A DNA stretch of 64,000 nt from Rebecca billardiae RCC1528 (taxonomy: Eukaryota > Protista > Haptophyta): the NCBI GenBank assembly GCA_965240325.2, contig OZ251222.1:4340001-4404000 (forward strand), read 5' to 3'. The position numbers and the translations under genes are program-made. Below are positions 9,001-44,821 of the stretch, piece by piece (position 1 is the first letter of the stretch; each line of letters begins with the position of its first letter). The notes beneath the pieces are model-generated. The model was given only the letters and a program-made list of their open reading frames with translations, made no database searches and was not told the origin of the DNA.

Positions 9001-9736
9001 GCGCACGAGCTGTCGCTCGAGCTGGTCCGCGCGCTCCGCCGCGCCGGCCGCGCAGGCGAGGCGGAGGCGGAGGCGCGCGCGCTGGCGGCGGCGAGCGCGC
9101 GCGCCGCCGCGCCCGCGGCCGGCGCGGCCGACGCCGACGACGCCACCGCCGCGCGCGTGCTCGCCGCCGAGCTTGCGCTGGGCGAGGTGCTCGCGGAGCG
9201 CGCGGCCGCGGGCGGCTCGGATCCGTCGGCGGCGGCGGCGGCGGCGGCCGAGGCCGAGGTGGTCTACCGCCGCGCGCTCGCGCGGATCGAGCGCGGCGGC
9301 GGCGGCGGCGGCCGCGGCCGCGGCCGCGGCCGCGGCGGCGGCGGCGGCGGCCACGGCGGCGCGGGGGCAGGGGCGGCGCGCGCCGAGGCGGCGCGCGCGC
9401 TCAGCGGCCTCGCGACGGCGCTGAGCGCGCAGGGGCGGCACGCGGAGGCGGAAGCGCTCGCGAGGCGCGCGCTCGCCGCGCCCGTCGGCGGCGCCGCGCC
9501 CGCGCCCGCTCCTGAGGCCGAGCGCGCCCTGGCGCGCGCGCTGCGTGGCCGCGGCCGCGCGGCGGACGCGGCCGCGGCCGCGCGGCGCGCGCACGCGGCG
9601 CTGAGCGCTGCGCACGGCGCGGAGGACGAGCGCACGCTGCGCGCTGGCGCGGAGCTGGCCGAGGCGCTACTCGCCGCCGCCGCGCCCGCCACCAGCGCCG
9701 CCGCCGCTGCGGGCGGCGGCGGCGGCAGCCCCGGGC

Positions 9737-9777
<41 letters not shown>

Positions 9778-10876
9778 CGCAGCCGCGAGCCGGCCGCGGC
9801 CGCGGCCGTGGCTGCCGCGGCGGCGGCGGCTGCGGAGGCGGAGGCGGTGCTCCGCGCGCTGATCGACGCGCACGTGCGCGCGCACGGCGCCGAGCACGCC
9901 GAGACGCTGCGCCTGCGCACGCGGCTCAGCGAGCTCCTCGTGCGCCGCGCGGACGACTCCGCCCGAGCCGCCGAGGCCGCGGTCGGCGCAGCGCGCGCCT
10001 CGCGCGCGGCGCACGAGAGATCGCGCGGCGCCGACGACGCGGCCACACTGGGCAGCGGCGCGCTGCTCGGCGAGGCGCTGGCGCGCGCGGGGCGGTGGGA
10101 GGAGGCGGAGGCGGAGCTCGCGCGCGCGCACGCCGGCCTCGGCGCCGCGCTCGGCGCCGAGCACGCGCGCACCCTCGCCGTCGGCGTCCGCCTTGCCGAC
10201 GCGCGCGGCCGCGCTGGGCGCTGGGCGGAGGCAGAGCGCTTGTATGCCGCGGCGGCGGCGGCGGCGGCGGGCGCGGGCGCGGGCGCGGAGGGCGGCGCGG
10301 AGGGCGCGCTGGGTGCGCGCGCGGCGGCGGGGCGCGCGCGCGCGCTCGAGGCGCTCGGGCGCGAGGCCGACGCGCTGCCGCTCCTCCGCGCCGCCCTCGC
10401 CGCCGCCGAGCGCTCGCACGGCCAGGACAGTGCGCGCGCCGCGGACGCGGCCGCGCGGCTTGCGGCGGCAGCGCACGGCGCGGGCCGCGCGCGCGAGGCG
10501 GAGGCGGCGTGGCGGCGCGCGCTCGGTGTGCTCGAGCGCGCGCACGGCCGCGCGGCGCCGCCCACGCTGCGCGCGCTCCGCGGCCTCGCCGCCGCGCTCT
10601 CTGCGCAGGGCCGCGCCGCCGACGCGGCCGCGCTGTGCGAGCGCGCCCTCGCGGCGCGCGACGCGTCGGCCGCGGCCGGCGGCGGCGGAGGCGGCGGCGG
10701 AGGCGGAGGCGGCGCGGCGGCGGGCGGCGGCGCGGGCGAGGCGGCGGCGCAGGAGCTGGCGCACGAGCTGGCGCACGCGCTCACGCTGCAGGGCAAGGCG
10801 CAGGAGGCGGAGGCGCTGCTGCGCACCTCGCTCGGCGCGCTCGACGCCGCCGCCGCCGCCGAGCCCGCCGCCGCCG

Positions 10877-10909
<33 letters not shown>

Positions 10910-11742
10910 CCGCGCCGCTGCGCGTGCGCGCGCGCGCGCTGCTCGCCGCCGCCCTGGCGGCGCAGGGGCGGCATGCGGAGGCGGAGGCGGCGGCCGAGCA
11001 GGCGTGCGCGGAGGGTGGCGGCGCGCTCGCCGAGCCGAGCGCTGCCGCGCGCGAGGCGGCGCGCACGCTCGCGCGCGTGCAGCACAGCGCGCGAGAGGCG
11101 GCCGCGCGGCGCGACGCCGCGGCGGAGTCGCTGCCGCGCGCAACAGCCGCGGCCGACGCGGCCGCGGCCGAGGCGGCGGGCGCGCGGCGCGCGGCGGCTC
11201 GGCTCGCGGCGGAGGTCGAGCTGTGCGCGCGCGAGCTCGGCGAGGCCGACGCACGCCGCGCCGCCGACGCCACCGCCGCCGCCGCCTCGGCCGCGCGGCT
11301 GCGCGCGCTGCTCGGTGGCGCTGTGCTGCGGCTGCCGCCCGCGCGGCCGCAGCCGCACGGCGCGGGTGGCGCGCCCGCCGGCGGTGGCGGCGGCGGCGTG
11401 GCGCTTGCGGGCGTGCACCTCCTCCGCGCGCTCGGGCTTGGTGCGGGCCCGGCGGACGCGCGCTCGGCGCTCGGCCCGGCGCAGCTGCGCGGGCTCGAGC
11501 GCGCGGTGCGCCGCGGCGCCTCCGCAGCGCGCGCGCACGCGTCCGTGAGCGCGCTGCGGCAGCAGCTGCACGCGCTGGCGTACGATGTACACAGGCACGC
11601 GCTGGGCGGCGCGCTGTGGCGGGACGAGCTGCTCACCACGTTCGCCCGCGCGACGGCGGCGACGCACGTCAAGCCGATGCGGCCGGCACTTGCTGCGGGA
11701 GGGGCGCCGGGCGTCGAGACGCGCGCGCAGTCGAGGTCGTAG
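6019..11742 (+). CDS. Kinesin motor protein with an Ala-rich coiled coil and C-terminal TPR (kinesin light chain-like) repeats
   Basis: VFVRVRP, P-loop AYGQTGSGKT, QVYNESVFDLL, switch I NRHSSRSH, switch II LVDLAGSER and [23 protein letters not shown]. Downstream are repeats of the type AQGRHAEAEALARRAL, HGAEHAETL and LGAEHARTL. Confidence 0.9.
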
Positions 11743-12431
11743 TGTCACAGCGGACGATGGATACGCGCTGCCACTCTGTCAACTGCAGTGCCGGCCAGCC
11801 GGCGCAGCCCCAGCCAGCGGCGCTGCACTCTGCAGCCCGGCTCATGGCTCTTCTAGAGTGCGTACTGACTGGCTAGCCAAGCTCTGCGCGGCTGAGGCAC
11901 GCATCGACCGCGAGCAGCATGACGGCCCGACTCTCCGCGCGGCGGACGGAGTGGCACGGCCACACGGCCCTGCTCAGTACTCGCTGCTCCCGCCACCTGT
12001 TCACATCCCGACGATTTGAGCCGCGCGACGTTCCGCCTAGCCGAGCGGAGACTCCTTGGCAAGCGACGGCCCGTCCGGCGGTCGGACCGCGGGCTGGTTG
12101 GCGCGGGTCCCAGCGCAGGACGCGAGTTCGTCCTGACCGCGTCGTCATGAGTGCGGACGCCAACGATGACGGCCGACACTGATGGTGGCGGCTCTCTGGG
12201 TCGGTGCCGTCAGACGGAGTCGCCGATGTTCGACGACTGTGCCGTGGGCTGTGGGTGTGGGACCTTTCACCGCGGAGTGGGCGTTGGGGGCGGCTCGGCT
12301 CGTCTTATGTCGTGCATGCGCGGCTGCTTTGGACCGCCATCGCTTTCCCCTTTTCCGGCGGACGTCTTTGTCGCGCACCTTCGCGCCCGGGCTGCATGCC
12401 TGCATTCAGTCATTCACGCTGCACCGCACAC

Positions 12432-13127
12432 ATGCTCGTGCCGCGACGCGCCGTGCTCCTGCTCGCGTCGTCTCTCCAGCCCGCGCGCCTGATGGTGCCC
12501 GCAGCCGCCGCCGCGCCGAGGAAGGTCGACCCGGAGTACCCGGGGACCGCCGTCGAGCGCATGTACGCCTGCCGCCAGCGCGTGGCCGAGCTCGCCGCCG
12601 GCGGCGGGTTTGATGGCGACTGGGGCTCCAAGGTGAGGAAGAATCTGCTCGCGGCCGCGGGGCTGCGCGACCTCCCCGACGCGCGGCCCGGGCAGGGGTA
12701 CACGGGGCACGCATTCAACGATTTCAACCACTGCGACGCGACCACGATGCTCATCGACGTCGCCGACTCGAACAACGAGGGCCGTGTACCCGGTATCGCG
12801 TTCAACAACCCGCTCGGCAACGGCATCCGCATCGCCTCGGTGCCCGAGCTCGGGGCCGGCGGCTCGTGGTCGACGTGCATCATCGGCAACAACGAGGAGC
12901 CGCCGCACGACGTCGCCCACGTGCAGTTCCAGTCGCGCATCGCGTTCAAGCTCGTCTGGCTGCCGCCGAGCTTCGAATCGTTTGCGCTGCTCGACGACGG
13001 CGGCAACGAGCTGGCGACCGGCCGACCCACCGGCCAGCTGCCCGCGCTGCGCGAGCGCCAGGCGAACTATCAGACCGTTCGTGGTGGGCGGTACGATCCG
13101 ATGCGCGGAAAGAGCCCCGCGGCGTAG
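12432..13127 (+). CDS. Hypothetical protein, probably a conserved algal family, with a putative N-terminal targeting peptide
   Basis: Strong coding-like composition and motif-rich sequence (DPEYPGTAVERM, GYTGHAFNDFNHCD, GGSWSTC, DVAHVQFQSRIAFKLVW). The start is placed at ATG 12432. Confidence 0.7.
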   Translation: MLVPRRAVLLLASSLQPARLMVPAAAAAPRKVDPEYPGTAVERMYACRQRVAELAAGGGFDGDWGSKVRKNLLAAAGLRDLPDARPGQGYTGHAFNDFNHCDATTMLIDVADSNNEGRVPGIAFNNPLGNGIRIASVPELGAGGSWSTCIIGNNEEPPHDVAHVQFQSRIAFKLVWLPPSFESFALLDDGGNELATGRPTGQLPALRERQANYQTVRGGRYDPMRGKSPAA

Positions 13128-13539
13128 AGGTCGACGGGCAGGCTTCGTCGGGCGAGGCCGACCGCCGCGGGCTGTGCTGCTGACTAGCGGAAGCGGTGTC
13201 CGCCTCGGCCTGTGCGGCGGGTCCTACTCGAGACTTTCGAGTGATCGACGCCGGGTCACAGACGTGACGAGACGGTGGGCCGTGCCCGTTACTATAATAT
13301 ATTTAATGATAATCGTCGTGACTGCCATCACTCATCAGGTGATCAGCATCACCACTCGTCGTCACACGTCGTACCCGTTATCTGTCTGTTACGCCGTCAT
13401 CCGGCTCAGCCGTCCGATCGCACTCGCTGTCTCACACGCAGCCGCACTGTCACCCCGAAGGCCACTCCCATGGAGCAGCACGCAGGCCATGCCAATGTCC
13501 CACGCCCCAAAGTCCGTCAGCACGCGGTGACGGCGCCCC

Positions 13540-28912: not shown

Positions 28913-29704
28913 TCAGCGCGTCCACTGCGCGGCGCCTATCTCCGGGAGCACACGCACCTCCACGTCCCCGTACACCTGCGTGATGCACGCGAGGCGGTAC
29001 GAGCCGGGGTTCTCGCGCAGCGTGCTCGCCTCGTCGAGCGACTTGCGCGAGCACCGCTCGCCCCCGTCGCGCACGTCGACGATGCACGTCCCGCACAGCT
29101 GCTTGCCGTTACAGTTGGTCCAGCGCGTGAGCGAGCGGTACACGTTCACCTTGCGCTCGGTCAGCTCGTCGCGCAGGTTGCAGCCGGTGGGCGCGGTGAA
29201 GGCGAGGTCGGGCTGGCCGTCGCGCACGACGCGGATGCTCACCGTCGGTGGCAGCCCCTCGTACCCCACGGACTGCTGCAGCTCCTCGCGCCCGCCCCGG
29301 AACAGGGTGAGCCGCATGCTCTCGCCCTCGGCCTTGGACATCACTTCGGTCACCGCAGACATCTCCGCGCCGACGAGGTTGGTCGAGCCCACGCCGAGCA
29401 GCTGGTCGCCGATGGCGATCTCGCCGCACAGCTCCGCCGCGCCGCCGGGCACCAGCGCCAGCACGTACGGCCAGCATAGGCTGAGGTCGCATCCAAAGTC
29501 GATGCCGGTGCGTCGGTCGATGGTGACCGAGTAGATGCGGTCGTCCTTGGCGACAGGCCGGCCGCGGCCCTGGAGCGCGCGCCGTTCCAGGCGCGATGAG
29601 CCGGGCATGCGCGCCCGCGAGCTCGTCCAGGCGCCCACCGCGGGGAGGATCAGCGCAATCGCTGCGGCGAATGTCGCGGCGCGGGCGCGCGTTGAGGCAG
29701 CCAT
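28913..29704 (-). CDS. PDZ domain plus 2Fe-2S ferredoxin protein, probable bipartite plastid-targeting sequence
   Basis: Signal-like FAAAIALILPAVGA-W; PDZ-like TGIDFG..GGAAELCGEIAIGDQLLGV..LTLFR; ferredoxin NCNGKQLCGTCIV...YRLAC. Confidence 0.85.
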   Translation of the reverse strand: MAASTRARAATFAAAIALILPAVGAWTSSRARMPGSSRLERRALQGRGRPVAKDDRIYSVTIDRRTGIDFGCDLSLCWPYVLALVPGGAAELCGEIAIGDQLLGVGSTNLVGAEMSAVTEVMSKAEGESMRLTLFRGGREELQQSVGYEGLPPTVSIRVVRDGQPDLAFTAPTGCNLRDELTERKVNVYRSLTRWTNCNGKQLCGTCIVDVRDGGERCSRKSLDEASTLRENPGSYRLACITQVYGDVEVRVLPEIGAAQWTR

Positions 29705-29874
29705 TTTCGCCGGCGGGCGTCGACGCGCCGCGCGGCCGCCGCCAAGCCCAAACCCCAGTCCAGCCAATCAGAAAGGCGGGAGTCCGCGGAAGACCCGTAA
29801 TACCCTCGTCATCTGCAGTCTTCCTCCGCCATCACCACGTCGCTGGTCGCGGACCGGCAGCACGCGAACTCGCT

Positions 29875-30980
29875 ATGGCGTCGGCTCTCACCCCGCTGAT
29901 GAAGGCGCGCGTCGACCTCGCGGCAGTGTACCGGCTGCTTGACAAGATGCACCTCAACGAGGGCATCTGCAACCACCTCACGGCGATGGTGCCGGGCACG
30001 ACCGACCAGTTCCTCGTGATCCGGTATGGGCTGCTCTGGTCGGAGGTGACGGCGAGCAACCTCGTGCTGATCAACGCGGCCGGGAAGATCATCGAGGGCG
30101 AGGGCCCGGTCGAGACGACCGCCTTCGAGATCCACAAGGCCATCCACCTCGCCGACCCGGCCAAGTACCAGTGCGTGCTGCACACGCACATGCCGTACCT
30201 CTCGACGCTCTGCTGCATCGAGCCGATGGAGCTCAAGGCGCGCGCGCGCGCACGGCCGCCGCCGCGGGGGCGCGCGGGTGGGGATGCGTTCGGCATGGCG
30301 CCTCGTCCGCCCACCCGCCGCCCCGCCCTCCGTGCCTCCCTCCCCGCCCCGCGCAGATGGTGCACCAGAACTCGTGCAGGTTCTACGAGAACGTCGCGTA
30401 CGACCCGCAGTTCAACGGGCTGGTGCTCGACGACAAGGAGGGCGAGCGCCTGGCCAAGGTGCCGCGCGTGCGCGCCACGCTGGCCGCCCGCGCCGCGCGC
30501 GCCGGCGTGACCGCGCTCCCGCCCCACGCGCCGCCCCCCGCGCGCGCCCCCAGATGATGGGCGGCAAGACTGTGCTGATGCACCGCTCGCACGGCGTGAT
30601 CGTGTGCGGCGCGACCGTCGCCGCGGCGTTCGACGACCTCTACTACCTCGAGCGCGCGGCGCAGCTGCAGGTGATGGCGCTGAGCACGGGTGCGCAGATC
30701 TCGCTCGTCGACCCCGAGACGGTGCGCGCGCTTATGCGCCCCCAGCGCGACGCGGCGCACGGCCATGGACGCGCGCGCCCCTTGATTGACGCGCGCTCCG
30801 TCCTCGCGCCCGCCCCCGCCGCAGTCCAAGCACGTCAAGGAGCAGATGGACGCCGGCAAGCTGGAATGGGCCGAGCAGCACCTCGAGGCACTCAAGCGCC
30901 AGTTGGGTCGGGAAGACCCGGAGTGGCCTGGGCTCAACGGCTGCGGCGCTGAGAACGGCGGCAAGCGCGCACGCAAGTAG
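29875..30980 (+). CDS. Class II aldolase/adducin family protein (candidate DsyD-like DMSHB decarboxylase); 4 exons
   Basis: DLAAVYRL..LNEGICNHLTAMVPG, FEIHKAIH, CVLHTHMPY and HRSHGVIVCG..AAAFDDLYYLERA. Introns are 30238-30356 (GC-AG), 30459-30553 and 30722-30824. The family call is firm; the substrate is inferred. Confidence 0.88.
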
Positions 30981-32547
30981 GCGACAGCTGGGGCGAGCAC
31001 CGACGCTCCCATGCCCCTGTCGGCACCGCCGTGGGCTTGCTCGCCATTGTATCCTACTGCTCAAGCTCCTCTGTTGTTGCTGTATACTACCACGACATCT
31101 ACTACGACATCAGCGCGCGGCCGCGCGCGCTGAGGCAGCCGCAGCTGCCAGTGAGCTGGGCCGCGGCAGCATGGGCCATGGCGGTGCCGCCCGCGCCGCG
31201 GGCGGTCGTGTACGTGATGGCAGTCGTGGCTCTTGTGGAGTTGTGCCGACAGTCTACAATTATCACAGACACAGGACCGCCCTAGATTGCCGAGTCAGTC
31301 GACACTGCATGACTCATAGTCACAGACAGTACAGAGTGTCGGCACTGTCGCCGGCGGGCGGCGATTGTCAATAATGTCATTGACGTGACTCGACGATTCG
31401 GATGATGCACGGTAGTCGAGTGCCCTGACTAATGGCCTGACTATTTAGTTTGAGCTGGCACCAGCAGTAGTTACTTTCATTATTCATATATATATATTAT
31501 TTCGTCTAATATTGAGTTTCTATTATAAACGGGACCGCACGCGGACCGACACAGTGGCCCCATTCAAAACAGTCGTCCGTACTCTGTGATTAATGAGGAA
31601 GTCGGAGGACCTAGCTACTGGCATCATCGTTTTATTTCCGTATACGAGCCAGCGGCCCAGTGACGGCAACATGCCGACGACATTCATCGATCGCCCGACT
31701 AATCTGGCACTGGCAGCAGCCTGTGGCCCGCTAGGCGCTAGCGCCAGGAAGTTCGGGGAAGGACCGAGCAGCTGCTGCATGTGCTCAGTGCTGATGAATA
31801 ACTACTACACTTTCTACTTATTACTTATACATAGCAGTGCGACGCGATCGCTTGCGTCCGTCGGACCAAAGTGATTAGTGAATGCAGTAGATCGAATGAA
31901 AGGATTCGATCAGATCATCAAATCATCAAGATATTGAAACTATATTATTATAAGATTATATTATATATAATATGTTGAAAGGCGGCCTGGTTGAGTGGTT
32001 CGGGTCTGGCGAATCATCGGAATGGCCGAATGACGACCACGTCCACTGCACGGCTGCACGCGGTGGCCCGAAGGCCGGACCGCTACATCGGGATACGAAC
32101 TTTACATCCGCCGCCGATATATATATAGCTAGCTAGTATACAGCGCGTCGTTGCTCTCTCGCGTCGCGTTCACTGCATAGGTTGACGCTGACTGCCGAGC
32201 TCCAGCACGCCGTGATCGGCGTGACAAGCGGATCCCGCCCACAGTCTGCAGCACCGCCCGCATGCCGCGCCAGTTGCGATTGGCACGGCTGCCGTCGTGT
32301 GCGGCTCGTGCGTGTTCGAGTTGTATGCAATGGACTCCGTTTCGCAGCAGGGTGCGTCGAGCCGGTGGTCGATGGGATCGGAATGAGCCGCAGCGCAGCG
32401 CACAGCCATCAGCCGCGCTGCAGCAGCCGGGTTGCAGTCGCAAGAGTACAGCCCGTCGCGTGGGCCGTCCGCCGGCGCGGCAACGCGGCGTGGGCCGCCT
32501 CGCCCGATGCTGCACTGCCGAGTGCCGGGCGGGCCGCCGCGCGCCGC

Positions 32548-33447
32548 TTAGAAGACCGGGCCTTCCTTGCGGCAGCCGAAGATGCCCCATGCGAACACCG
32601 CCTTGTCGTTTTGGATGTCGACGCGCTGGGTGAGCGAGTCCATCCATTTGTCGAGGTACTCGTTTGTCACGCCCTCCGAGATCATCGCTGCGCGGTGCGT
32701 GTTGATCTGGTCCACCATCGACTGGAAGTAGTGCTTGAGGTGGTCGGAGAAGTCGAGGAAGCTCACGTCGCGGTACCCGGCGTCGACGAGCAGCTGGCGG
32801 TACTCCGACGGCCGCGCCATCTTGGTGGTGGCGTTGCGGTCTGTGAAGTCCTTGAGCGCCTTCTCGTCGGCGCCGTCCGCGCCCATGATGTCGGTGAAGA
32901 CGAACGCACCGCCCGGCTTGAGCACGCGCTTGAGGTCCTTGAGCAGCGCCGGCTTGGACGCGGCGTGGCACAGCACCTCGCACGAGATCACGTGTGTGAA
33001 CTTCTCCGACCAGTCCGCGGGCAGGCCGTCGTTGAAGTTGCCGAGGATCACCTCGTTCTTGTCGCCGACGCCGCGCGCTTTTGCCTCGTCCTGGTTCATC
33101 TTGTTCTGCTCGGGCGAGATGTTCATGCCAATCACCTTGCAGCCAAAGCGCTCGATCAGCTCGTGCGAGATGCCGCCGTGGCCAGAGCCAAGATCGAGGA
33201 CGAGCGAGTCGGCGGTGACGGGCCGCATCCAGTCCAGCGAGGTGAGCAGGCGCGCGTTCGTCTCCTTCGACGACTCGTACACGCCGTCCGACGCCTTGCG
33301 GAACACGCCGTAGTGAATGTCCATCCCACCGCCGCCCATCACGTACTTATAGAACGTGCGCGCGTGCGCGAGGTCGTACTGCTCGACCACCTTGTCGGCG
33401 ACCTCGGTCTCGGCGAACTGCTTATCTTTGAAGTCTCCAGTCGACAT
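32548..33447 (-). CDS. SAM-dependent methyltransferase, sarcosine/dimethylglycine-MT-like fold (candidate DSYE/DsyG-type MTHB S-methyltransferase)
   Basis: Intronless, 299 aa from ATG 33447. Motifs: FYKYVMGGGGMDIHYG, motif I VLDLGSGHGG, GMNISPEQN, SCEVLCH, KRVLKPGGAFVFTD and C-terminal AWGIF. Confidence 0.9.
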   Translation of the reverse strand: MSTGDFKDKQFAETEVADKVVEQYDLAHARTFYKYVMGGGGMDIHYGVFRKASDGVYESSKETNARLLTSLDWMRPVTADSLVLDLGSGHGGISHELIERFGCKVIGMNISPEQNKMNQDEAKARGVGDKNEVILGNFNDGLPADWSEKFTHVISCEVLCHAASKPALLKDLKRVLKPGGAFVFTDIMGADGADEKALKDFTDRNATTKMARPSEYRQLLVDAGYRDVSFLDFSDHLKHYFQSMVDQINTHRAAMISEGVTNEYLDKWMDSLTQRVDIQNDKAVFAWGIFGCRKEGPVF

Positions 33448-34621
33448 GGCTGTGCGTGTGTGAAGGCGCGAGGCGACGACTCGGGGTGCGCGACAACGGG
33501 AGAGCAGCGCGCGGACGGTCGAACACGTGGTTGACACGATGAGAATCAGCGTCTAGCGCCAACAAGCGTCGGCCACGGATCTCTTTGCGAGCTCCCCAAA
33601 TGAGGGTCCGGAGACCGAGCGTGAGTCCGGGAGCGCTCTTGGCATCCACGCTCGAGATTCAATCTCGCAACGGGTGGGTCACCCAGCGAGTCCCGACGCA
33701 CCCAGCCTGGTCCGGCGTGGGGGCGATAATCAGAGTGCGAGGGATCACAGCGAGCCCAGCTTCGCCCTCTTGCTCATCCGCCCAGCGCTTTCCAGCGGTG
33801 TGCGGCGCTATCGCCTCCTCCGCGGCCGCCGCCGAATCAAAGCCAAGGTCTGCTTGACTTCCCTCGGCCTCAAGATGGTCCGGGAAGCTTTATGAGGAGC
33901 TTCGGAAGATTTTCCCGGACAAAATTCTGCACATACGGTAGAAGTTTCAGATTTGTGCCGCTCGGCTGATGAAATCTCGTACCCCCATACAACTCACAGA
34001 TGACTGTAGTTATTTTTTCTGATGAGCGTCGTACCCGTCTCATGTCTGCTGCATCATACCATCTCTCACAGAGGCTTCAGTCAGAGTGGCGGGTGGGGCC
34101 GAAAAGGCACAAATGCAACGTATTCGGGGTGGGCTAACGAGGTGATTGTAGGTGATTACCGCGGGTGGAGTCAGATGTAGCTAGCTATCAGGAGGTGTGA
34201 TGCTTCTTATGCTTCTTACCCGCCGGCCGTTCATGGATAATTGGTTAAAAGCGGGCGCCAAACCAGATTCAGAAGGAGATTCGCCCTGATTCAGGGATCT
34301 CAGGGCCTTCTCCCGGCTTCGGACATCGTTACGACCCGGGTCGCAGGTAGGCGGGGCCCGGCGCACCACCTGCCGCACGGCGTCAAGATCCTGGGCCGCA
34401 TCTTTTCGGTGACGCGGAGTGACGCGGCCCAGCGTCCGCTGCGCCTCGTCGATTCGGAGCGCCACAGAACTCCTCGCGAACGGGTCAACCTCGAAGCGGG
34501 TGGCGACGACCTCGCCGCTCTAGATCCACTCGCAGAGCGCGCTCCTCCCGCCCACACAGGGCTCCGCCGACACGGCGAATTCGGGCGAAACTAGCACCCG
34601 CCTCACCACCAGGCCGCTGAG

Positions 34622-35737
34622 ATGCCTGTCCTGTCCCCTCGCCACCCGTCCTTCCTTGTCGTCGGCTCGGGCTGCGTCGGCTCGTACCTTGCGACGACCC
34701 TCGGCAAAAACGGCGCGTCGGTAACGCTGAAGGCGCGCGGCCCGCCGAAGACGCCCATCGCGAAGCTCGCAGCGAAGGCCGGCGTCGAGGTCGTCACCGA
34801 CCTCGCCCCGCTCGCACGAGCCATCGGCGCGGGCGATCGGCCGCCGCTCGACGCCATCTTTGTCGCCACAAAAACATACAGCTTCGAGGATGTCGCGAAC
34901 CAGCTGGTCGAGGCGGGGCCGTCGCTGCGGCCGCAGCTCGCCACCGTCGGCTGCTACAACGGCCACGTGCTCGGCGCCAAGGACCTCTTTGGCCAAATTG
35001 GCGCGGGCAGCTCCGCGGGCCCGTCGGTGTTCTGCAAGGCGCTCGTCCCGGGCGGCTACTCGATCAAGGAGGACGGCTCGGGGTTCAACGTGACGAACGC
35101 GGGCCAGAAGTGGTCCCTCCTCTCGACCACGCCCGAGGTGCGTCAGCTCGCCAAGCACATGGCCTCGTACGGCGTCGCCACCGTCGCCGGCGGCTTTGAG
35201 GCGGACACGCGCAAGTACCTCGTGAACAACACCGCAAACCTGGTCTCCGTGATCGCAAACACCAACTGTAACGGGCTGATCAACGACCCGGCGCTGCTCG
35301 CGCGGATGCGCTCCATCTTCCGCGAAACAGCGGAGGTGCTGCGAGCCGCGCCCGCGCACCGCGAGCACTTCCCCTCCGCCATCTCGCTCGACGAGCTCGA
35401 GGAGCAGGTGTTGAGCGGCATTGCGTCCTACGCCGAGCACTACCCGTCGTCGTGCAAGGACTTCCGCGCGGGCCAGCCGATCGAGGTGAGCTCGCTGAAC
35501 GGGTACATCTGCGCGCTGGGCGAGCAGCTGGGCATGGACACGCCGGTCAACAAGGCCGTCGTCGACGACGTCTCCATCGTCCTCCGCCAGCACCAGCAGC
35601 AAAATGCGGACGCCGAGGAGGCGGAGCGCGCGCCAACTGCGCCAAAACCGCAGCTGCCCGAGGCGCGCATCCGGCGCGGGCTCGGCGCGCGCATCGTGCC
35701 CGAGCAGCCGGCGTCAATGACGGTAACTCGGCGCTGA
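34622..35737 (+). CDS. Ketopantoate reductase (ApbA/PanE) family 2-oxoacid reductase (candidate MTOB reductase)
   Basis: Rossmann motif LVVGSGCVGSYLA, IFVATKTYS, YNG, RKYLVNNTAN (catalytic Lys region) and PSSCKDFRAGQPIEVSSLNGYI (ApbA_C signature). Confidence 0.85.
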   Translation: MPVLSPRHPSFLVVGSGCVGSYLATTLGKNGASVTLKARGPPKTPIAKLAAKAGVEVVTDLAPLARAIGAGDRPPLDAIFVATKTYSFEDVANQLVEAGPSLRPQLATVGCYNGHVLGAKDLFGQIGAGSSAGPSVFCKALVPGGYSIKEDGSGFNVTNAGQKWSLLSTTPEVRQLAKHMASYGVATVAGGFEADTRKYLVNNTANLVSVIANTNCNGLINDPALLARMRSIFRETAEVLRAAPAHREHFPSAISLDELEEQVLSGIASYAEHYPSSCKDFRAGQPIEVSSLNGYICALGEQLGMDTPVNKAVVDDVSIVLRQHQQQNADAEEAERAPTAPKPQLPEARIRRGLGARIVPEQPASMTVTRR

Positions 35738-42252: not shown

Positions 42253-43710
42253 TCACGCGGGGGGGGCTGGCGGTCTCGTCCCCGATGCCGATGGCGATGG
42301 GGCTGGCTGACCCCAGGGGCGGACCCCATCGCGGGCTGGCTCCCCGCCGCCTCCTGCGGCCTCAGCTTCGGCTGCGACTGCAGGCTCCACCCCGGTCACC
42401 GGCGCATCACCTGCGGGGGCTGCGAGCTGCACCGTGGCCTGTGTGCTGCCCGCGACCGGGTGGCCGAGCCCGGCTGCGGGCGCCATGGCCGCCGCTGGCT
42501 CAGCCCCATCACTCGGCGCGGACGGCTCGGAGAGTGCGGCGAGCCTCCAGCCCGTCTTCAGCACGCGGAGCCCAAAGGGGCAGGGCTGCCGCGCTGCCGC
42601 GCCGCCCTCGTCGCTGCTCTCGCCGCTGCTCTCGCCGTGGCCCCCGAAGAGGCGCTCGCCGTGCGCCAGCCCGAGCAGCGGCAGCAGCGGGTGCAGCATG
42701 GCGCCGCTCACAGCCGCAGGGGCGGCGTGCTCGGCCACGGGCCAGCCATCGCCCGCGCCGGGTGCAGGCGTCCCACCGCGCGGCTCGGCCAGGTCGTAGA
42801 TCAGCGCGCGGCCGTCGCGGCTCCCCGTCGCCAGCCAGCGCGCCGACGCGTCCAGCGAGAAGAGCAGCCGCTGGTTGGAGTCCGCGTCGCGCGCGTACGC
42901 GCACAGCGGCTGCGTCGAGCGGCGCAGGTCCCACCGCAGGATCCGGCCATCGCGCCGCGCGCCCGTGAAGAGCTGCGTGTGGTCGAGGCCGAAGGCGACG
43001 TGGGTCACGCCGGCGGTGTGGCCACCGAGCAGCGCGACCGGGCCGCACCGACCGCCGTCGCCGCGCGCGTACACGCCCGTGGCGCCGGAGTAGGAGCCGA
43101 GCGCAAACAGCGAGGAGCCGAGCGGCGCGGCCGCGATGCAGCCGAGGATGCCGCGCAGGCCCTCGGCGTCGCGCCGCGTCTTGCACGTGCGCCAGGTGGC
43201 GGCCGGGGCGCCCGCGCGCGAGGTGTGGAACATGCGCACGGCGCGCTCGAAGCCGCACAGGATCTGCTCGCCGTCTGGCGTGAACGTCGCCGAGTAGGCG
43301 CCCACCACCTGCTCGAGCTCGTCGCGCGCCACGTAACTTGCGCGCAGCGCGCCACTGAAGGCGTCCCAAAGGTGAGCCGGCTGGTCGCGGCACGTGGCGA
43401 GGAAGGTGCACGTACTTGGATCTGCCGAGTGCATCCGCGGATACCACGCGTAGTCGTACACCGGCTCGCTCTCTGCGCACGCGACAGCCGGTGCTGGATC
43501 GGCCGGCTGCGCGTGCTCGTCCTCGACAGCGTGCCCATCGCCTGTGAGGACGTGCGCGGGCATCTCGTACAGGAGAAGGCGCCGATCGTCGCAGGCGGTC
43601 AGGACGCACGTCCCGTCGGGAGACCATCGCATCCCCTTGACCACGTCCGGAGTGTCCACGCGCCAGAGCGGCTGCAGGCCGACTGACCAGTCATGCGTCC
43701 AGGCCGCCAT
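42253..43710 (-). CDS. WRAP53: Telomerase Cajal body protein 1 (WD40)
   Basis: KGMRWSPDGTCVLT, VYDYAWYP.M....P.TC.FLATCRDQPAHLWDAFSGALRASY, GHTAGVTH, WDLR and SNQRLLFSLD are characteristic TCAB1 blocks. Confidence 0.85.
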   Translation of the reverse strand: MAAWTHDWSVGLQPLWRVDTPDVVKGMRWSPDGTCVLTACDDRRLLLYEMPAHVLTGDGHAVEDEHAQPADPAPAVACAESEPVYDYAWYPRMHSADPSTCTFLATCRDQPAHLWDAFSGALRASYVARDELEQVVGAYSATFTPDGEQILCGFERAVRMFHTSRAGAPAATWRTCKTRRDAEGLRGILGCIAAAPLGSSLFALGSYSGATGVYARGDGGRCGPVALLGGHTAGVTHVAFGLDHTQLFTGARRDGRILRWDLRRSTQPLCAYARDADSNQRLLFSLDASARWLATGSRDGRALIYDLAEPRGGTPAPGAGDGWPVAEHAAPAAVSGAMLHPLLPLLGLAHGERLFGGHGESSGESSDEGGAAARQPCPFGLRVLKTGWRLAALSEPSAPSDGAEPAAAMAPAAGLGHPVAGSTQATVQLAAPAGDAPVTGVEPAVAAEAEAAGGGGEPARDGVRPWGQPAPSPSASGTRPPAPPA

Positions 43711-43825
43711 CGCACGATGGCGCAATCGGTCAAGAAGTCACTACTGCTCAGGTAGACCCAGCCTCACCGCCATCGTGTCGTCGGCGACTCGGCGGGCTGT
43801 GCGCCTGTGCCCGGCTTTTTTCACG

Positions 43826-44821
43826 ATGCGGCCGGCACGAGCGAGCACAGCTCGCCGTCAGGGCGCGTGGGCGCGCTCCTCGCGCTGCTGGTTGGCTCTC
43901 GGCCTACTGTCCACGTCAATCCTCGGCGCGAGCGCGCGATCTCGGCCACCCAGCCCGCATGCGCTCGCTCGGCCACGGCCGCTGCCGGCCGCAGCCGCTT
44001 TGCGCCATCGCGGCAGCGCGCGAAGGGCGGCGTCCATCGTCGCATCGGACGTGGCGACGAGCACGTACACTCTCGCAGTCTCGTTCGAACCCTTCCTGAG
44101 CCTGCCACCCCTGGCACGTGACGCGCTGTGCGCCGGCGCGTGCGCGGGCGGCGCGGGCGCCTGGGTCGGCATCTGGACTGGGCTCGCTTCGTCCGGGGCG
44201 GTGGAGTCCAAGCTGTCACGGAAGATGATCCACGTGGGCTCGGCCCCGCTCTTCGTGCTCGTGTGGCCCCTCTTCTCAGCCGAGCCCACCGCGCGCCTAT
44301 TCGCCGCCATCGTGCCCACGCTCAACGCCGCGCGGATACTGCTGTCGGCGCGCGCGCCCGAGGGCGAGGCGGCCCTCGTCACCGCCATCTCGCGCTCGGG
44401 TCGGCGGGAGGAGGTGCTGAGCGGGCCGCTGTACTACGTGCTCGTGCTCTTCCTGGCGACGGCGTGCGCATGGCGCTCCTCGGTCGTCGGCGTCATCGCG
44501 CTCGCGCAGATGGCCGTCGGCGACGGGCTCGCCGACATCGTCGGGCGGCGGCTGGGCGGCACGGGCAAGTGGCCGTTTGCGCCGAGCAAGTCGATCGCCG
44601 GCACGACCGCCTTTGTGCTCGGCGCGTTCGGCGCGTCGGTCGGGTTGATCGGCTGGCTGCACCTGTTCGGCTGCCTCGCGACCAGCCCGCAGGACGCGGC
44701 CGGGCGCGCGCTGGCCATCTCGCTGTCGTGCGCCGCCGTGGAGCTGCTGCCCTCGAGCGTGGTGGACGACAACATCTCTGTGCCGCTGCTCGGCGCGCTG
44801 CTCGCCGCGCTGCTCTTCTGA
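43826..44821 (+). CDS. VTE5: Phytol/farnesol kinase (CTP-dependent, dolichol kinase-like family), probably plastid-targeted
   Basis: LSRKMIHVG, WPLFS, ISRSGRREEVLSGPLYY, GDGLADIVGRRLG, KSIAGT and DDNISVP. Confidence 0.85.
   Translation: MRPARASTARRQGAWARSSRCWLALGLLSTSILGASARSRPPSPHALARPRPLPAAAALRHRGSARRAASIVASDVATSTYTLAVSFEPFLSLPPLARDALCAGACAGGAGAWVGIWTGLASSGAVESKLSRKMIHVGSAPLFVLVWPLFSAEPTARLFAAIVPTLNAARILLSARAPEGEAALVTAISRSGRREEVLSGPLYYVLVLFLATACAWRSSVVGVIALAQMAVGDGLADIVGRRLGGTGKWPFAPSKSIAGTTAFVLGAFGASVGLIGWLHLFGCLATSPQDAAGRALAISLSCAAVELLPSSVVDDNISVPLLGALLAALLF

What the first reader, a model, noticed from the sequence alone, without database searches (positions are those of the whole stretch)
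29875..30980. Stand-alone, intron-containing DsyD-like class II aldolase
Seen: a complete set of metal-binding His residues (HTH and SHG) plus the NH motif, three spliceosomal introns, no obvious targeting peptide, and a position convergent with the MT. Inference: it is a eukaryotic DMSHB decarboxylase. The introns suggest long residence in the nuclear genome rather than contamination, whereas the MT and reductase are intronless and may have arrived separately.
Basis: partly seen in the sequence, partly recalled or inferred. Interest (0 to 1): 0.75.

Follow-up and report, generated by a model that had tools for sequence, protein, structure and literature searches.

The report
Candidate last enzyme of algal DMSP synthesis
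A real four-exon algal gene for an iron-oxygenase-like "class II aldolase" sits beside the known DMSP methyltransferase; it is unrelated to bacterial DsyD but is a testable candidate for the unidentified last step of algal DMSP synthesis.

Summary
Window 29875-30980 (+) is a four-exon gene for a 262-aa Aldolase_II (PF00596) protein. It has three short, very GC-rich phase-0 introns, no N-terminal extension, and lies tail-to-tail with a methyltransferase. There is no RNA evidence; splicing rests on gap-free alignment to intronless orthologues.

"DsyD-like" is wrong. DsyD is a PF04115 ureidoglycolate-lyase-type domain, a different family.

The functional idea gains support from other evidence:
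- The neighbouring methyltransferase is a clade D DSYE orthologue, 80% identical to the Exanthemachrysis MMETSP1464 protein.
- The block PDZ/ferredoxin | aldolase-like | DSYE | ApbA reductase recurs in Diacronema lutheri and two metagenome contigs.
- Diatoms and Chromera fuse a DSYE/TpMMT-like methyltransferase, a 2-hydroxyacid dehydrogenase and an aldolase-II domain into one protein. In Nitzschia that gene sits beside DSYE.
- The protein keeps three His but has Ala at the FucA catalytic Glu. Its nearest characterised relatives are non-haem Fe(II) oxygenases (NovR, TqaM, pyruvic oxime dioxygenase). NovR/CloR oxidatively decarboxylate alpha-hydroxy acids, the chemistry needed for DMSHB to DMSP.

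There is no biochemical evidence. Clustering is absent in Micromonas, and close relatives occur in soil bacteria. I put the DMSHB decarboxylase reading at about 0.5. The scan had already flagged this cluster on this same window.

The parts
29875..30237 (+). Exon 1 of the aldolase-II-like gene (aa 1-121). Holds Asn33-His34 (29971-29976), Ala83 at the FucA Glu73 position (30121-30123), His103 (30181-30183) and His105 (30187-30189).
   Evidence: Pfam PF00596 at 4e-20.
30238..30356 (+). Intron 1: 119 nt, GC donor and AG acceptor, phase 0, 87% GC.
   Evidence: Removing it gives a gap-free alignment to intronless orthologues.
30357..30458 (+). Exon 2 (aa 122-155). Holds His124 at the FucA Tyr113 position.
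30459..30553 (+). Intron 2: 95 nt, GT..AG, phase 0, 91% GC.
30554..30721 (+). Exon 3 (aa 156-211). Holds the third metal ligand, His168 (30590-30592).
   Evidence: Pfam PF00596 at 1e-7.
30722..30824 (+). Intron 3: 103 nt, GT..AG, phase 0, 80% GC.
30825..30980 (+). Exon 4 (aa 212-262 plus stop). Encodes the C-terminal helical extension with the conserved 'EWA..H..A.KR' stretch, shared with orthologues and, in altered form, with the diatom fusion domains.
28913..29704 (-). Head-to-head neighbour encoding a PDZ + [2Fe-2S] ferredoxin-like protein. Its ATG is 170 bp from the aldolase-like ATG. The pairing is conserved in all five pavlovophyte loci.
32548..33447 (-). DSYE (MTHB S-methyltransferase), clade D orthologue, intronless, convergent with the aldolase-like gene.
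   Evidence: 80% identity to the MMETSP1464 Exanthemachrysis gayraliae protein P0123. That clade is shown functional in PMC11306096.
34622..35737 (+). ApbA/PanE-family 2-oxoacid reductase, candidate MTOB reductase. It is the last gene of the conserved block.
   Evidence: PF02558, PF08546; 65% identity to the D. lutheri neighbour.

Best explanation
This is a nuclear, probably cytosolic, 262-aa enzyme of the adducin-like branch of the class II aldolase fold.

Shown:
- It keeps the three-His metal site (His103, His105, His168).
- It has Ala where sugar-phosphate aldolases have the catalytic and metal-binding Glu, and the residues aligned to FucA N29, T43, S71 and S72, which I recall as its phosphate-binding residues, are not kept.
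- Its gene lies in a conserved pavlovophyte block with the validated DMSP methyltransferase DSYE and an ApbA-type 2-oxoacid reductase.

Inferred: it is a mononuclear non-haem Fe(II), O2-dependent enzyme like NovR/CloR, TqaM and pyruvic oxime dioxygenase. DMSHB would chelate the iron through its carboxylate and 2-hydroxyl. O2 would then drive C1-C2 cleavage, giving CO2 and DMSP. This is the last step (DDC) of the transamination pathway.

It would be a non-homologous replacement of bacterial DsyD.
For: - Family and fold: PF00596 only. Orthologues pass the NCBIfam NF005068 cut-off.
- Structure: the AlphaFold model of the nearest homologue has pLDDT 95. Apart from the uncharacterised 3ocr, an entry titled L-fuculose-1-phosphate aldolase (4xxf, rank 11, TMq 0.85) and non-enzymatic adducin, its best PDB matches are pyruvic oxime dioxygenase, NovR and TqaM (TM 0.83-0.89). 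One TqaM entry is a complex with the alpha-hydroxy acid D-3-phenyllactate. E. coli FucA matches less well, at TM 0.69-0.70.
- Active site: three His are conserved, FucA Glu73 is Ala and Asn29 is His in all members. CloR/NovR have a 3xHis iron site and carry out O2-dependent oxidative decarboxylation of a mandelate-type alpha-hydroxy acid (PMC13111500).
- Chemistry needed: DMSHB to DMSP is an oxidative decarboxylation (PMC10989797).
- Neighbour identity: the adjacent gene is a DSYE clade D orthologue.
- Gene block: PDZ/Fer2 | aldolase-like | DSYE | ApbA is found in the window, in D. lutheri and in two metagenome contigs. CCMP2436 keeps the aldolase-like gene and ApbA together.
- Fusion: an independent fusion joins a DSYE/TpMMT-like methyltransferase, 2-Hacid_dh and Aldolase_II in diatoms and Chromera; the search returned 87 hits, most carrying all three domains. 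It lies head-to-head with DSYE in Nitzschia inconspicua and adjacent in Nitzschia sp. Nitz4.
- Distribution: the eukaryotic clade includes Tetraselmis, Micromonas, Polarella and pavlovophytes. The paper reports DSYE in Tetraselmis and Pavlova/Exanthemachrysis. That Micromonas and Polarella make DMSP is from my own knowledge.
- Literature: the algal DDC is stated to be unknown (PMC11306096). No paper in the library links this fold to DMSP.
Against: - There is no enzymology and no expression data; no RNA run was listed.
- Synteny with D. lutheri continues past ApbA, so part of the clustering may be inherited gene order and not selection.
- In CCMP2436, DSYE lies on another contig.
- There is no clustering in Micromonas, in 80 metagenome loci, or around the DSYE of pelagophyte CCMP2097.
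- The fused diatom domain is only about 25% identical and forms a separate clade. It is an analogue and not an orthologue.
- The sister clade is betaproteobacterial, from MAGs and metagenome contigs (many look like soil samples; not established), where the gene pairs with a GNAT acetyltransferase. Relatives also lie on rhizobial megaplasmids. An orthologue occurs in Myrmecia, which I believe to be a terrestrial alga. The family therefore has other substrates.
Confidence: 0.5

Rival explanations
1. It is the same kind of enzyme (a metal-dependent, probably Fe(II)/O2, enzyme of the adducin-like branch), but it works on another small carboxylic or alpha-hydroxy acid unrelated to DMSP. Its position beside DSYE is inherited synteny.
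For: - Downstream synteny with D. lutheri extends beyond the block.
- There is no clustering in Micromonas, in the pelagophyte, or in 80 metagenome loci.
- Bacterial relatives are widespread and sit in other contexts: with GNAT, or with haloacid dehalogenase II in S. meliloti.
- An orthologue occurs in Myrmecia.
Against: - The same trio (2-oxoacid reductase, DSYE-like methyltransferase, aldolase-II domain) recurs as a single polypeptide in diatoms and Chromera, next to DSYE in two Nitzschia species.
- The aldolase-like gene stays next to ApbA in CCMP2436 even after rearrangement.
Confidence: 0.3
2. It belongs to the DMSP and methionine pathway but at another step. Examples are oxidative decarboxylation of MTOB or MTHB to 3-methylmercaptopropionate, or supply of MTOB in the manner of MtnB.
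For: - The cluster and fusion link it to the pathway but do not specify the step.
- NovR/CloR also accept the alpha-keto acid (PMC13111500).
- MtnB is a class II aldolase.
Against: - The MtnB models score 20-35 bits against cut-offs of 137-226.
- The aldolase and dehydratase Glu is absent, and the FucA residues I recall as phosphate-binding are not kept.
- DSYE methylates MTHB and the product DMSHB still needs a decarboxylase (PMC11306096), so DDC is the vacant step.
Confidence: 0.1
3. It is a canonical sugar-phosphate class II aldolase, epimerase or dehydratase of the FucA, AraD or MtnB type.
For: Pfam PF00596. JGI's automatic name is 'ribulose-5-phosphate 4-epimerase/fuculose-1-phosphate aldolase'.
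Against: - FucA Glu73 is Ala, Asn29 is His, Thr43 is Tyr, and Ser71/Ser72 are Thr/Thr.
- The FucA, AraD and MtnB NCBIfam models score far below their cut-offs.
- E. coli FucA is a weaker structural match (TM 0.69-0.70) than the Fe(II) oxygenases (0.83-0.89).
Confidence: 0.03
4. It is a homologue of the DsyD domain of DsyGD.
For: None beyond the proposed function.
Against: DsyD is PF04115, ureidoglycolate-lyase-like (PMC11306096). No PF04115 match was found in any exon or orthologue.
Confidence: 0.01

Closest known systems
NovR/CloR, bifunctional non-haem iron oxygenases of aminocoumarin biosynthesis (PDB 9ryg)
   Same: - Class II aldolase fold with a C-terminal helical extension (TM 0.86-0.88; sequence E 1e-17).
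- Three-His metal site.
- They perform O2-dependent oxidative decarboxylation of an alpha-hydroxy acid to the acid one carbon shorter (PMC13111500). DMSHB to DMSP requires the same formal reaction.
   Different: - Only about 22-24% identity.
- Their substrate is aromatic (prenylated hydroxyphenylpyruvate and mandelate), not a sulfonium aliphatic acid.
- They come from a bacterial secondary-metabolite cluster.
- No activity has been shown for the algal protein.
TqaM, fungal non-haem iron enzyme (PDB 9m09, 9m0a, 9n43)
   Same: Same fold (TM up to 0.89). It is iron-bound and has been crystallised with the alpha-hydroxy acid D-3-phenyllactate. [quoted passage not shown]
   Different: About 21% identity. 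It belongs to a fungal natural-product pathway and has a different substrate.
Pyruvic oxime dioxygenase (PDB 8il8, 8iqa, 8ix6)
   Same: After 3ocr, it is the best structural match among characterised enzymes (TM 0.83-0.85, rmsd 1.8 A). It is an O2-dependent enzyme on the class II aldolase fold.
   Different: 24% identity. It is an enzyme with a different substrate (pyruvic oxime).
Uncharacterised bacterial 'aldolase' family NCBIfam NF005068 / PRK06486 (and PDB 3ocr from Pseudomonas syringae)
   Same: Orthologues of the window protein pass the NF005068 cut-off. They are 48-50% identical to betaproteobacterial members. 3ocr is the top PDB match by both sequence and structure.
   Different: - The bacterial members usually sit in front of a GNAT acetyltransferase.
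- No function is known for them.
- The eukaryotic proteins form their own clade (SH-aLRT 100).
- They have His where the betaproteobacteria have Glu, at the FucA Tyr113 position.
Diatom and Chromera fusion proteins: methyltransferase + 2-Hacid_dh + Aldolase_II (for example N. inconspicua P0339, Chromera P0382)
   Same: - They combine the same three activities as the pavlovophyte block: a 2-oxoacid reductase, a DSYE/TpMMT-like methyltransferase and an adducin-like aldolase-II domain.
- That domain has the same NH, T-A, HxH and NHG motifs.
- The fusion gene lies next to DSYE in Nitzschia.
   Different: - The aldolase-II domain is only about 25% identical and forms a separate clade nearer NF005451.
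- The reductase is of the non-homologous 2-Hacid_dh type.
- The function is untested. PMC10989797 mentions larger 'TpMMT-like' proteins with extra domains and unknown function.
DsyD domain of DsyGD (Gynuella sunshinyii, Oscillatoriales)
   Same: Only the proposed reaction, DMSHB to DMSP.
   Different: A different Pfam family (PF04115). It is fused to DsyG, and stand-alone DsyD-like algal proteins lacked DDC activity (PMC11306096).
FucA, AraD and MtnB sugar-phosphate class II aldolases
   Same: The same superfamily fold and the same three His.
   Different: The catalytic Glu is absent and the FucA residues I recall as phosphate-binding are not kept. The NCBIfam scores are far below cut-off, and the extra C-terminal helices are absent from FucA.

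Membership tests
Class II aldolase/adducin superfamily (Pfam PF00596) | Significant match to the PF00596 profile over the whole domain | tested here: met
   Exon 1 matches profile positions 2-101 (4e-20) and exon 3 matches positions 147-183 (1e-7). Full-length orthologues carry PF00596 only.
Class II aldolase/adducin superfamily (Pfam PF00596) | Three His metal ligands (FucA His92, His94, His155) | tested here: met
   His103, His105 and His168 align with them and are invariant in 57 homologues.
Sugar-phosphate aldolases, epimerases and dehydratases (FucA, AraD, MtnB) | Catalytic and metal-binding Glu (FucA Glu73) | tested here: not met
   Ala83 occupies this position in the window protein, and Ala is found in every orthologue and fusion domain.
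Sugar-phosphate aldolases, epimerases and dehydratases (FucA, AraD, MtnB) | Residues recalled as phosphate-binding in FucA (Asn29, Thr43, Ser71, Ser72), and curated family score | tested here: not met
   These positions are His, Tyr, Thr and Thr. That they bind phosphate in FucA is from my own knowledge. The FucA, AraD and MtnB NCBIfam models score 19-48 bits against cut-offs of 137-400.
DsyD (DMSHB decarboxylase domain of DsyGD) | Pfam PF04115 ureidoglycolate-lyase-type domain (PMC11306096) | tested here: not met
   No PF04115 hit at E<=0.1 in any exon. Homologues carry PF00596 only.
DsyD (DMSHB decarboxylase domain of DsyGD) | DDC activity (DMSHB to DMSP) | not testable with these tools
   Needs an enzyme assay.
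NCBIfam NF005068 (PRK06486) 'aldolase' equivalog | Whole-protein score of at least 269 bits | tested here: inconclusive
Exon 1 alone scores 129 bits. Orthologues P0002, P0005 and P0008 score 289, 271 and 284 bits.
NovR/CloR/TqaM/POD-type non-haem Fe(II) oxygenases on the class II aldolase fold | Three-His site without the aldolase Glu, and closer fold and sequence similarity than to sugar-phosphate aldolases | tested here: met
   One search shows the three-His site with Ala. Sequence E-values are 5e-19 (TqaM), 1e-17 (NovR) and 1e-15 (POD) against 7e-8 for FucA. TM scores are 0.83-0.89 against 0.69-0.70 for E. coli FucA. The 3xHis site of CloR/NovR is stated in PMC13111500. One entry titled L-fuculose-1-phosphate aldolase (4xxf, Glaciozyma antarctica) matches as closely as the oxygenases (E 1.2e-23; TMq 0.85).
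NovR/CloR/TqaM/POD-type non-haem Fe(II) oxygenases on the class II aldolase fold | Dependence on Fe(II) and O2; oxidative C-C cleavage | not testable with these tools
   Needs biochemistry (metal analysis, O2 dependence, 18O2 labelling).
Adducin (cytoskeletal) | Neck and MARCKS-like tail after the aldolase-like head; about 700 aa | tested here: not met
   The protein is 262 aa and ends about 50 aa after the domain. Adducin matches cover the head domain only.

The most novel reading that the evidence does not exclude
The adducin-like class II aldolase of this block is the missing algal DMSHB oxidative decarboxylase, a three-His Fe(II)/O2 oxygenase unrelated to DsyD. The analogous domain fused to a methyltransferase and a 2-hydroxyacid dehydrogenase in diatoms and Chromera would have the same role. 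Together with the ApbA reductase and DSYE, the pavlovophyte locus would then be the first eukaryotic gene cluster encoding the three dedicated steps from MTOB to DMSP. The diatom protein would be a three-step DMSP synthase.
Probability: 0.45. Interest if true: 0.85.

Novelty: new variant of a known kind. Interest (0 to 1): 0.72.

Why it matters
[quoted passage not shown] In algae only the methyltransferase step (DSYB, DSYE, TpMMT) has a known gene. Wang et al. 2024 state that knowledge of the decarboxylase step 'is still lacking' and that algal DsyD-like proteins were inactive.

This locus gives a concrete candidate with a plausible mechanism, and it can be tested cheaply:
- Intronless orthologues can be cloned directly.
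- Published assay hosts without DDC activity already exist.

Two independent genomic arrangements, a cluster and a fusion, also nominate reductase candidates for the preceding step. If confirmed, it would add a marker gene for predicting DMSP production from omics data, and a new reaction for the Fe(II) oxygenases built on the aldolase fold.

Tried and rejected
- **RNA evidence for splicing.** No RNA run could be listed.
- **tblastx synteny.** It timed out and was replaced by ORF-level blastp.
- **Introner idea.** The three introns match each other and the rest of the window only through GC-rich low complexity. There is no evidence for an introner family.
- **Co-transfer of the aldolase-like gene and ApbA from bacteria.** A Burkholderiales MAG has ApbA near the homologue, but that ApbA is essentially unrelated to the algal one. 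Rejected.
- **Clustering outside pavlovophytes.**
  - The Micromonas orthologues sit among housekeeping genes.
  - The DSYE of pelagophyte CCMP2097 has no aldolase-like or reductase neighbour.
  - 80 metagenome loci have no DSYE, ApbA, PDZ or 2-Hacid_dh gene in their flanks.
  - Contig L027, from the sister eukaryotic clade, was uninformative.
- **N-terminal 440 aa of the Nitzschia fusion.** There is no Pfam domain, so no fused aminotransferase.
- **ESM Atlas.** It returned only generic bacterial 'class II aldolase' clusters.
- **TpMMT identity of the fused methyltransferase.** I could not compare it with TpMMT directly because no sequence was available. This rests on 25% identity to DSYE and on the remark in PMC10989797.
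Full report

The window is very GC-rich, 60-88% per 2 kb. Reading 29500-31400 and splicing at AG|G-type sites gives four exons: 29875-30237, 30357-30458, 30554-30721 and 30825-30980. Together they are 789 nt and encode 262 aa.

- The three introns are 119, 95 and 103 nt.
- All are phase 0 and 80-91% GC, with C-rich tracts before the AG.
- Intron 1 uses a GC donor; introns 2 and 3 use GT.
- None is a multiple of three, so an unspliced message loses the third metal ligand.

The spliced protein aligns from about residue 10 to the C-terminus with intronless homologues, with no gap at any junction. Identities are 76% to P0003, 67% to Diacronema lutheri P0005, 69% to Pavlovales sp. CCMP2436 P0008, and 48-50% to betaproteobacterial proteins.

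Pfam PF00596 hits exon 1 (4e-20) and exon 3 (1e-7). There is no N-terminal extension relative to the orthologues.

The gene is tail-to-tail with the methyltransferase at 32548-33447 (-). No RNA run could be listed, so splicing is supported by homology only.

**2. 'DsyD-like' is a mislabel.**

Wang et al. 2024 (PMC11306096) define DsyD as the C-terminal PF04115, ureidoglycolate-lyase-like domain of DsyGD. They report no single-domain DsyD, found the algal PF04115 proteins inactive, and state that the DDC step is still unknown. The window protein and all 120 listed relatives carry PF00596 only. It is therefore not a DsyD relative. A June 2026 review still lists only DsyD for this step (PMC13360808).

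**3. What kind of enzyme is it?**

- *Family scores.* Orthologues pass the cut-off of the uncharacterised NCBIfam equivalog NF005068/PRK06486 'aldolase'. They score only 19-48 bits on the FucA, AraD and MtnB models, whose cut-offs are 137-400.
- *Sequence matches to PDB.* In order: 3ocr (structural genomics, 1e-28), adducin heads, 4xxf, TqaM (5e-19), NovR (1e-17), the 8il8 group (1e-15), and only then FucA (7e-8).
- *Structure.* An AlphaFold model of the nearest homologue (P0003, 57-sequence alignment, pLDDT 95.3) gives the same order by fold:
  - 3ocr, TM 0.91
  - pyruvic oxime dioxygenase, 0.83-0.85
  - NovR, 'bifunctional non-haem iron oxygenase', 0.86-0.88
  - TqaM, 'non-heme iron enzyme', one entry with D-3-phenyllactate, up to 0.89
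  - FucA, 0.69-0.70
- *An exception.* One entry titled L-fuculose-1-phosphate aldolase (4xxf, Glaciozyma antarctica) sits among the close matches by sequence (1.2e-23) and by fold (TMq 0.85).
- *Active site.* In a multiple alignment with E. coli FucA, the three His ligands are kept. FucA Glu73 is Ala in every member, Asn29 is His, Thr43 is Tyr, and Ser71/Ser72 are Thr/Thr.

This is the '3xHis' iron site described for CloR/NovR. Those enzymes use O2 to decarboxylate an alpha-hydroxy (mandelate-type) acid oxidatively to the acid one carbon shorter, with incorporation of 18O (PMC13111500). PMC12186529 describes TqaM in the same terms. DMSHB to DMSP is exactly such an oxidative decarboxylation of a 2-hydroxy acid (PMC10989797).

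**4. Genomic context in pavlovophytes.**

The neighbouring methyltransferase is 80% identical to the MMETSP1464 (Exanthemachrysis gayraliae RCC1523) protein and 72% to the Nitzschia inconspicua protein. These are the clade D and clade E DSYE enzymes shown to methylate MTHB. The next gene, 34622-35737 (+), is an ApbA/PanE-family reductase.

The order PDZ/[2Fe-2S]-like (-) | aldolase-like (+) | DSYE (-) | ApbA (+) is found in these loci:

| Locus | Arrangement |
|---|---|
| Window | full block |
| D. lutheri (L001) | full block |
| JGI metagenome contig (L005) | full block |
| Logan contig (L006) | full block, with a rhomboid gene inserted between the aldolase-like gene and DSYE |
| Pavlovales CCMP2436 (L004) | PDZ and the aldolase-like gene retained, ApbA retained but inverted; no DSYE match in the 20.7-kb locus, and its DSYE (P0152) is listed only on contigs up to 165 kb against 513 kb for this one |

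All these orthologues are intronless, so the window's introns are lineage-specific.

A caveat applies. Synteny with D. lutheri continues downstream of ApbA (window about 39-45 kb) but not upstream of the PDZ gene. Part of the conservation may therefore be plain inheritance.

**5. An independent arrangement in diatoms and Chromera.**

In N. inconspicua, the gene head-to-head with DSYE encodes a 1219-aa intronless protein. Its domains are:

- a methyltransferase domain, 25% identical to DSYE over 222 aa up to the C-terminal motif;
- a D-2-hydroxyacid dehydrogenase;
- an Aldolase_II domain of the same adducin-like branch (best model NF005451), with the same NH, T-A, HxH and NHG motifs.

The search for this architecture returned 87 proteins, most of them carrying all three domains. 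They come from Nitzschia, Bacillariaceae MAGs, Cylindrotheca, Amphora, Cyclotella cryptica, Skeletonema marinoi and Chromera velia.

In Nitzschia sp. Nitz4 the fusion and DSYE are adjacent gene models on scaffold190 (names). Seven further DSYE and fusion pairs share the same longest-contig length: 10637, 8884, 44917, 108852, 6607, 7262 and 7901. That suggests adjacency but I did not verify it.

PMC10989797 mentions larger 'TpMMT-like' diatom proteins with extra domains and unknown function, probably these. The domains are not named there. No paper in the library combines TpMMT or DMSP synthesis with this fold.

So the trio of 2-oxoacid reductase, MTHB-type methyltransferase and three-His aldolase-fold domain recurs with a non-homologous reductase and a non-orthologous aldolase-like domain (25% identity, separate clade). 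This is the strongest argument that the domain serves the step after methylation.

**6. Distribution and counter-evidence.**

In a maximum-likelihood tree of 88 rows:

- The window protein falls in a 9-row pavlovophyte clade (SH-aLRT 96).
- That clade lies inside a 60-row clade (SH-aLRT 100) holding every named eukaryote: Polarella, Tetraselmis, Micromonas, Cymbomonas and Myrmecia.
- This clade groups (SH-aLRT 88) with a betaproteobacterial clade.
- The fusion domains form a distant clade of their own.

Several points count against the DDC reading:

- In Micromonas the orthologue sits among housekeeping genes.
- The DSYE of pelagophyte CCMP2097 has no such neighbours.
- None of 80 metagenome loci has DSYE, ApbA or 2-Hacid_dh in its flanks.
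- Bacterial members usually precede a GNAT acetyltransferase, in 38 of the 80 loci, and lie downstream of rpoBC in Burkholderiales MAGs.
- On S. meliloti pSymA a relative follows a type II haloacid dehalogenase. From my own knowledge such enzymes produce 2-hydroxy acids. That fits an alpha-hydroxy-acid substrate class but not DMSP.
- Relatives are common on rhizobial and Burkholderia megaplasmids.

On the last point, Wang et al. note that DDC activity exists in non-producers such as Rhizobium. That is compatible with this distribution but is not evidence for the claim.

**7. Verdict.**

- The homology claim is wrong.
- The functional claim is a well-motivated but untested hypothesis, which I put at about 0.5.
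- The main rival, at about 0.3, is the same kind of enzyme acting on another acid, with the synteny inherited.
- A sugar-phosphate aldolase or MtnB role is essentially excluded by the missing Glu and the family scores.
- The mechanism (Fe(II), O2, chelation of the 2-hydroxy-carboxylate, C1-C2 cleavage) is inferred from relatives and not shown.

My results agree with both and add the diatom and Chromera fusion and the oxygenase affinity.

Noticed in passing
window 28913-29704 (-); L001 9177-9977; L004 8402-9262; L005 1398-2114; L006 430-1224: A PDZ + plant-type [2Fe-2S] ferredoxin-like protein (Cys-x5-Cys-x2-Cys...Cys) with a hydrophobic, signal-like N-terminus lies head-to-head with the aldolase-like gene in all five pavlovophyte loci. 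The start codons are 23 to about 740 bp apart, and 170 bp apart in the window. It may be co-regulated from a bidirectional promoter and could serve as a redox partner of an iron enzyme.
   Followed up: partly
L009 4853-8512 (-) next to DSYE at L009 10001-11085 (+); proteins P0339-P0423: Diatoms and Chromera velia encode single polypeptides with DSYE/TpMMT-like methyltransferase + D-2-hydroxyacid dehydrogenase + Aldolase_II domains (about 840-1250 aa). The Nitzschia-type proteins have an extra 440-aa N-terminal region with no Pfam match. The gene is adjacent to DSYE in two Nitzschia species.
   Followed up: partly
L016-L022 and 38 of loci L029-L108: In betaproteobacterial MAGs and other metagenome contigs (probably bacterial), the closest bacterial homologues are followed by an often overlapping GNAT (Acetyltransf_3) gene. 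In Burkholderiales MAGs the pair lies directly downstream of rpoB-rpoC. This is a conserved two-gene unit of unknown function.
   Followed up: partly
L026 7222-8744 (S. meliloti ABS7 pSymA): The arrangement is LysR regulator | type II haloacid dehalogenase | 'aldolase' (a family member). As I recall, TqaM likewise works with a haloacid-dehalogenase-type enzyme (TqaF). It hints that the family acts on 2-hydroxy acids.
   Followed up: no
L004 (Pavlovales sp. CCMP2436) 8402-13468: The block is rearranged here. ApbA is inverted relative to the aldolase-like gene. No DSYE was found in the 20.7-kb locus; its DSYE (P0152) is listed only on contigs up to 165 kb, so it probably lies elsewhere. A gene that is downstream in the window (43454-44818) lies on the other side.
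   Followed up: partly
window 33448-33537 (-): The DSYE ORF extends 30 codons upstream of the called start, to an in-frame ATG. The extension is rich in Arg, Ser and Thr. Whether it is a presequence or untranslated is unknown.
   Followed up: no
window 30238-30239: Intron 1 uses a GC donor instead of GT. All three introns are 95-119 nt and 80-91% GC, which may be typical of this genome.
   Followed up: partly
window 30363-30365 (His124): At the position of FucA Tyr113, all named eukaryotic orthologues have His. The betaproteobacterial sequence in the alignment has Glu and S. meliloti has Gly. This may be a specificity determinant of the algal clade.
   Followed up: no
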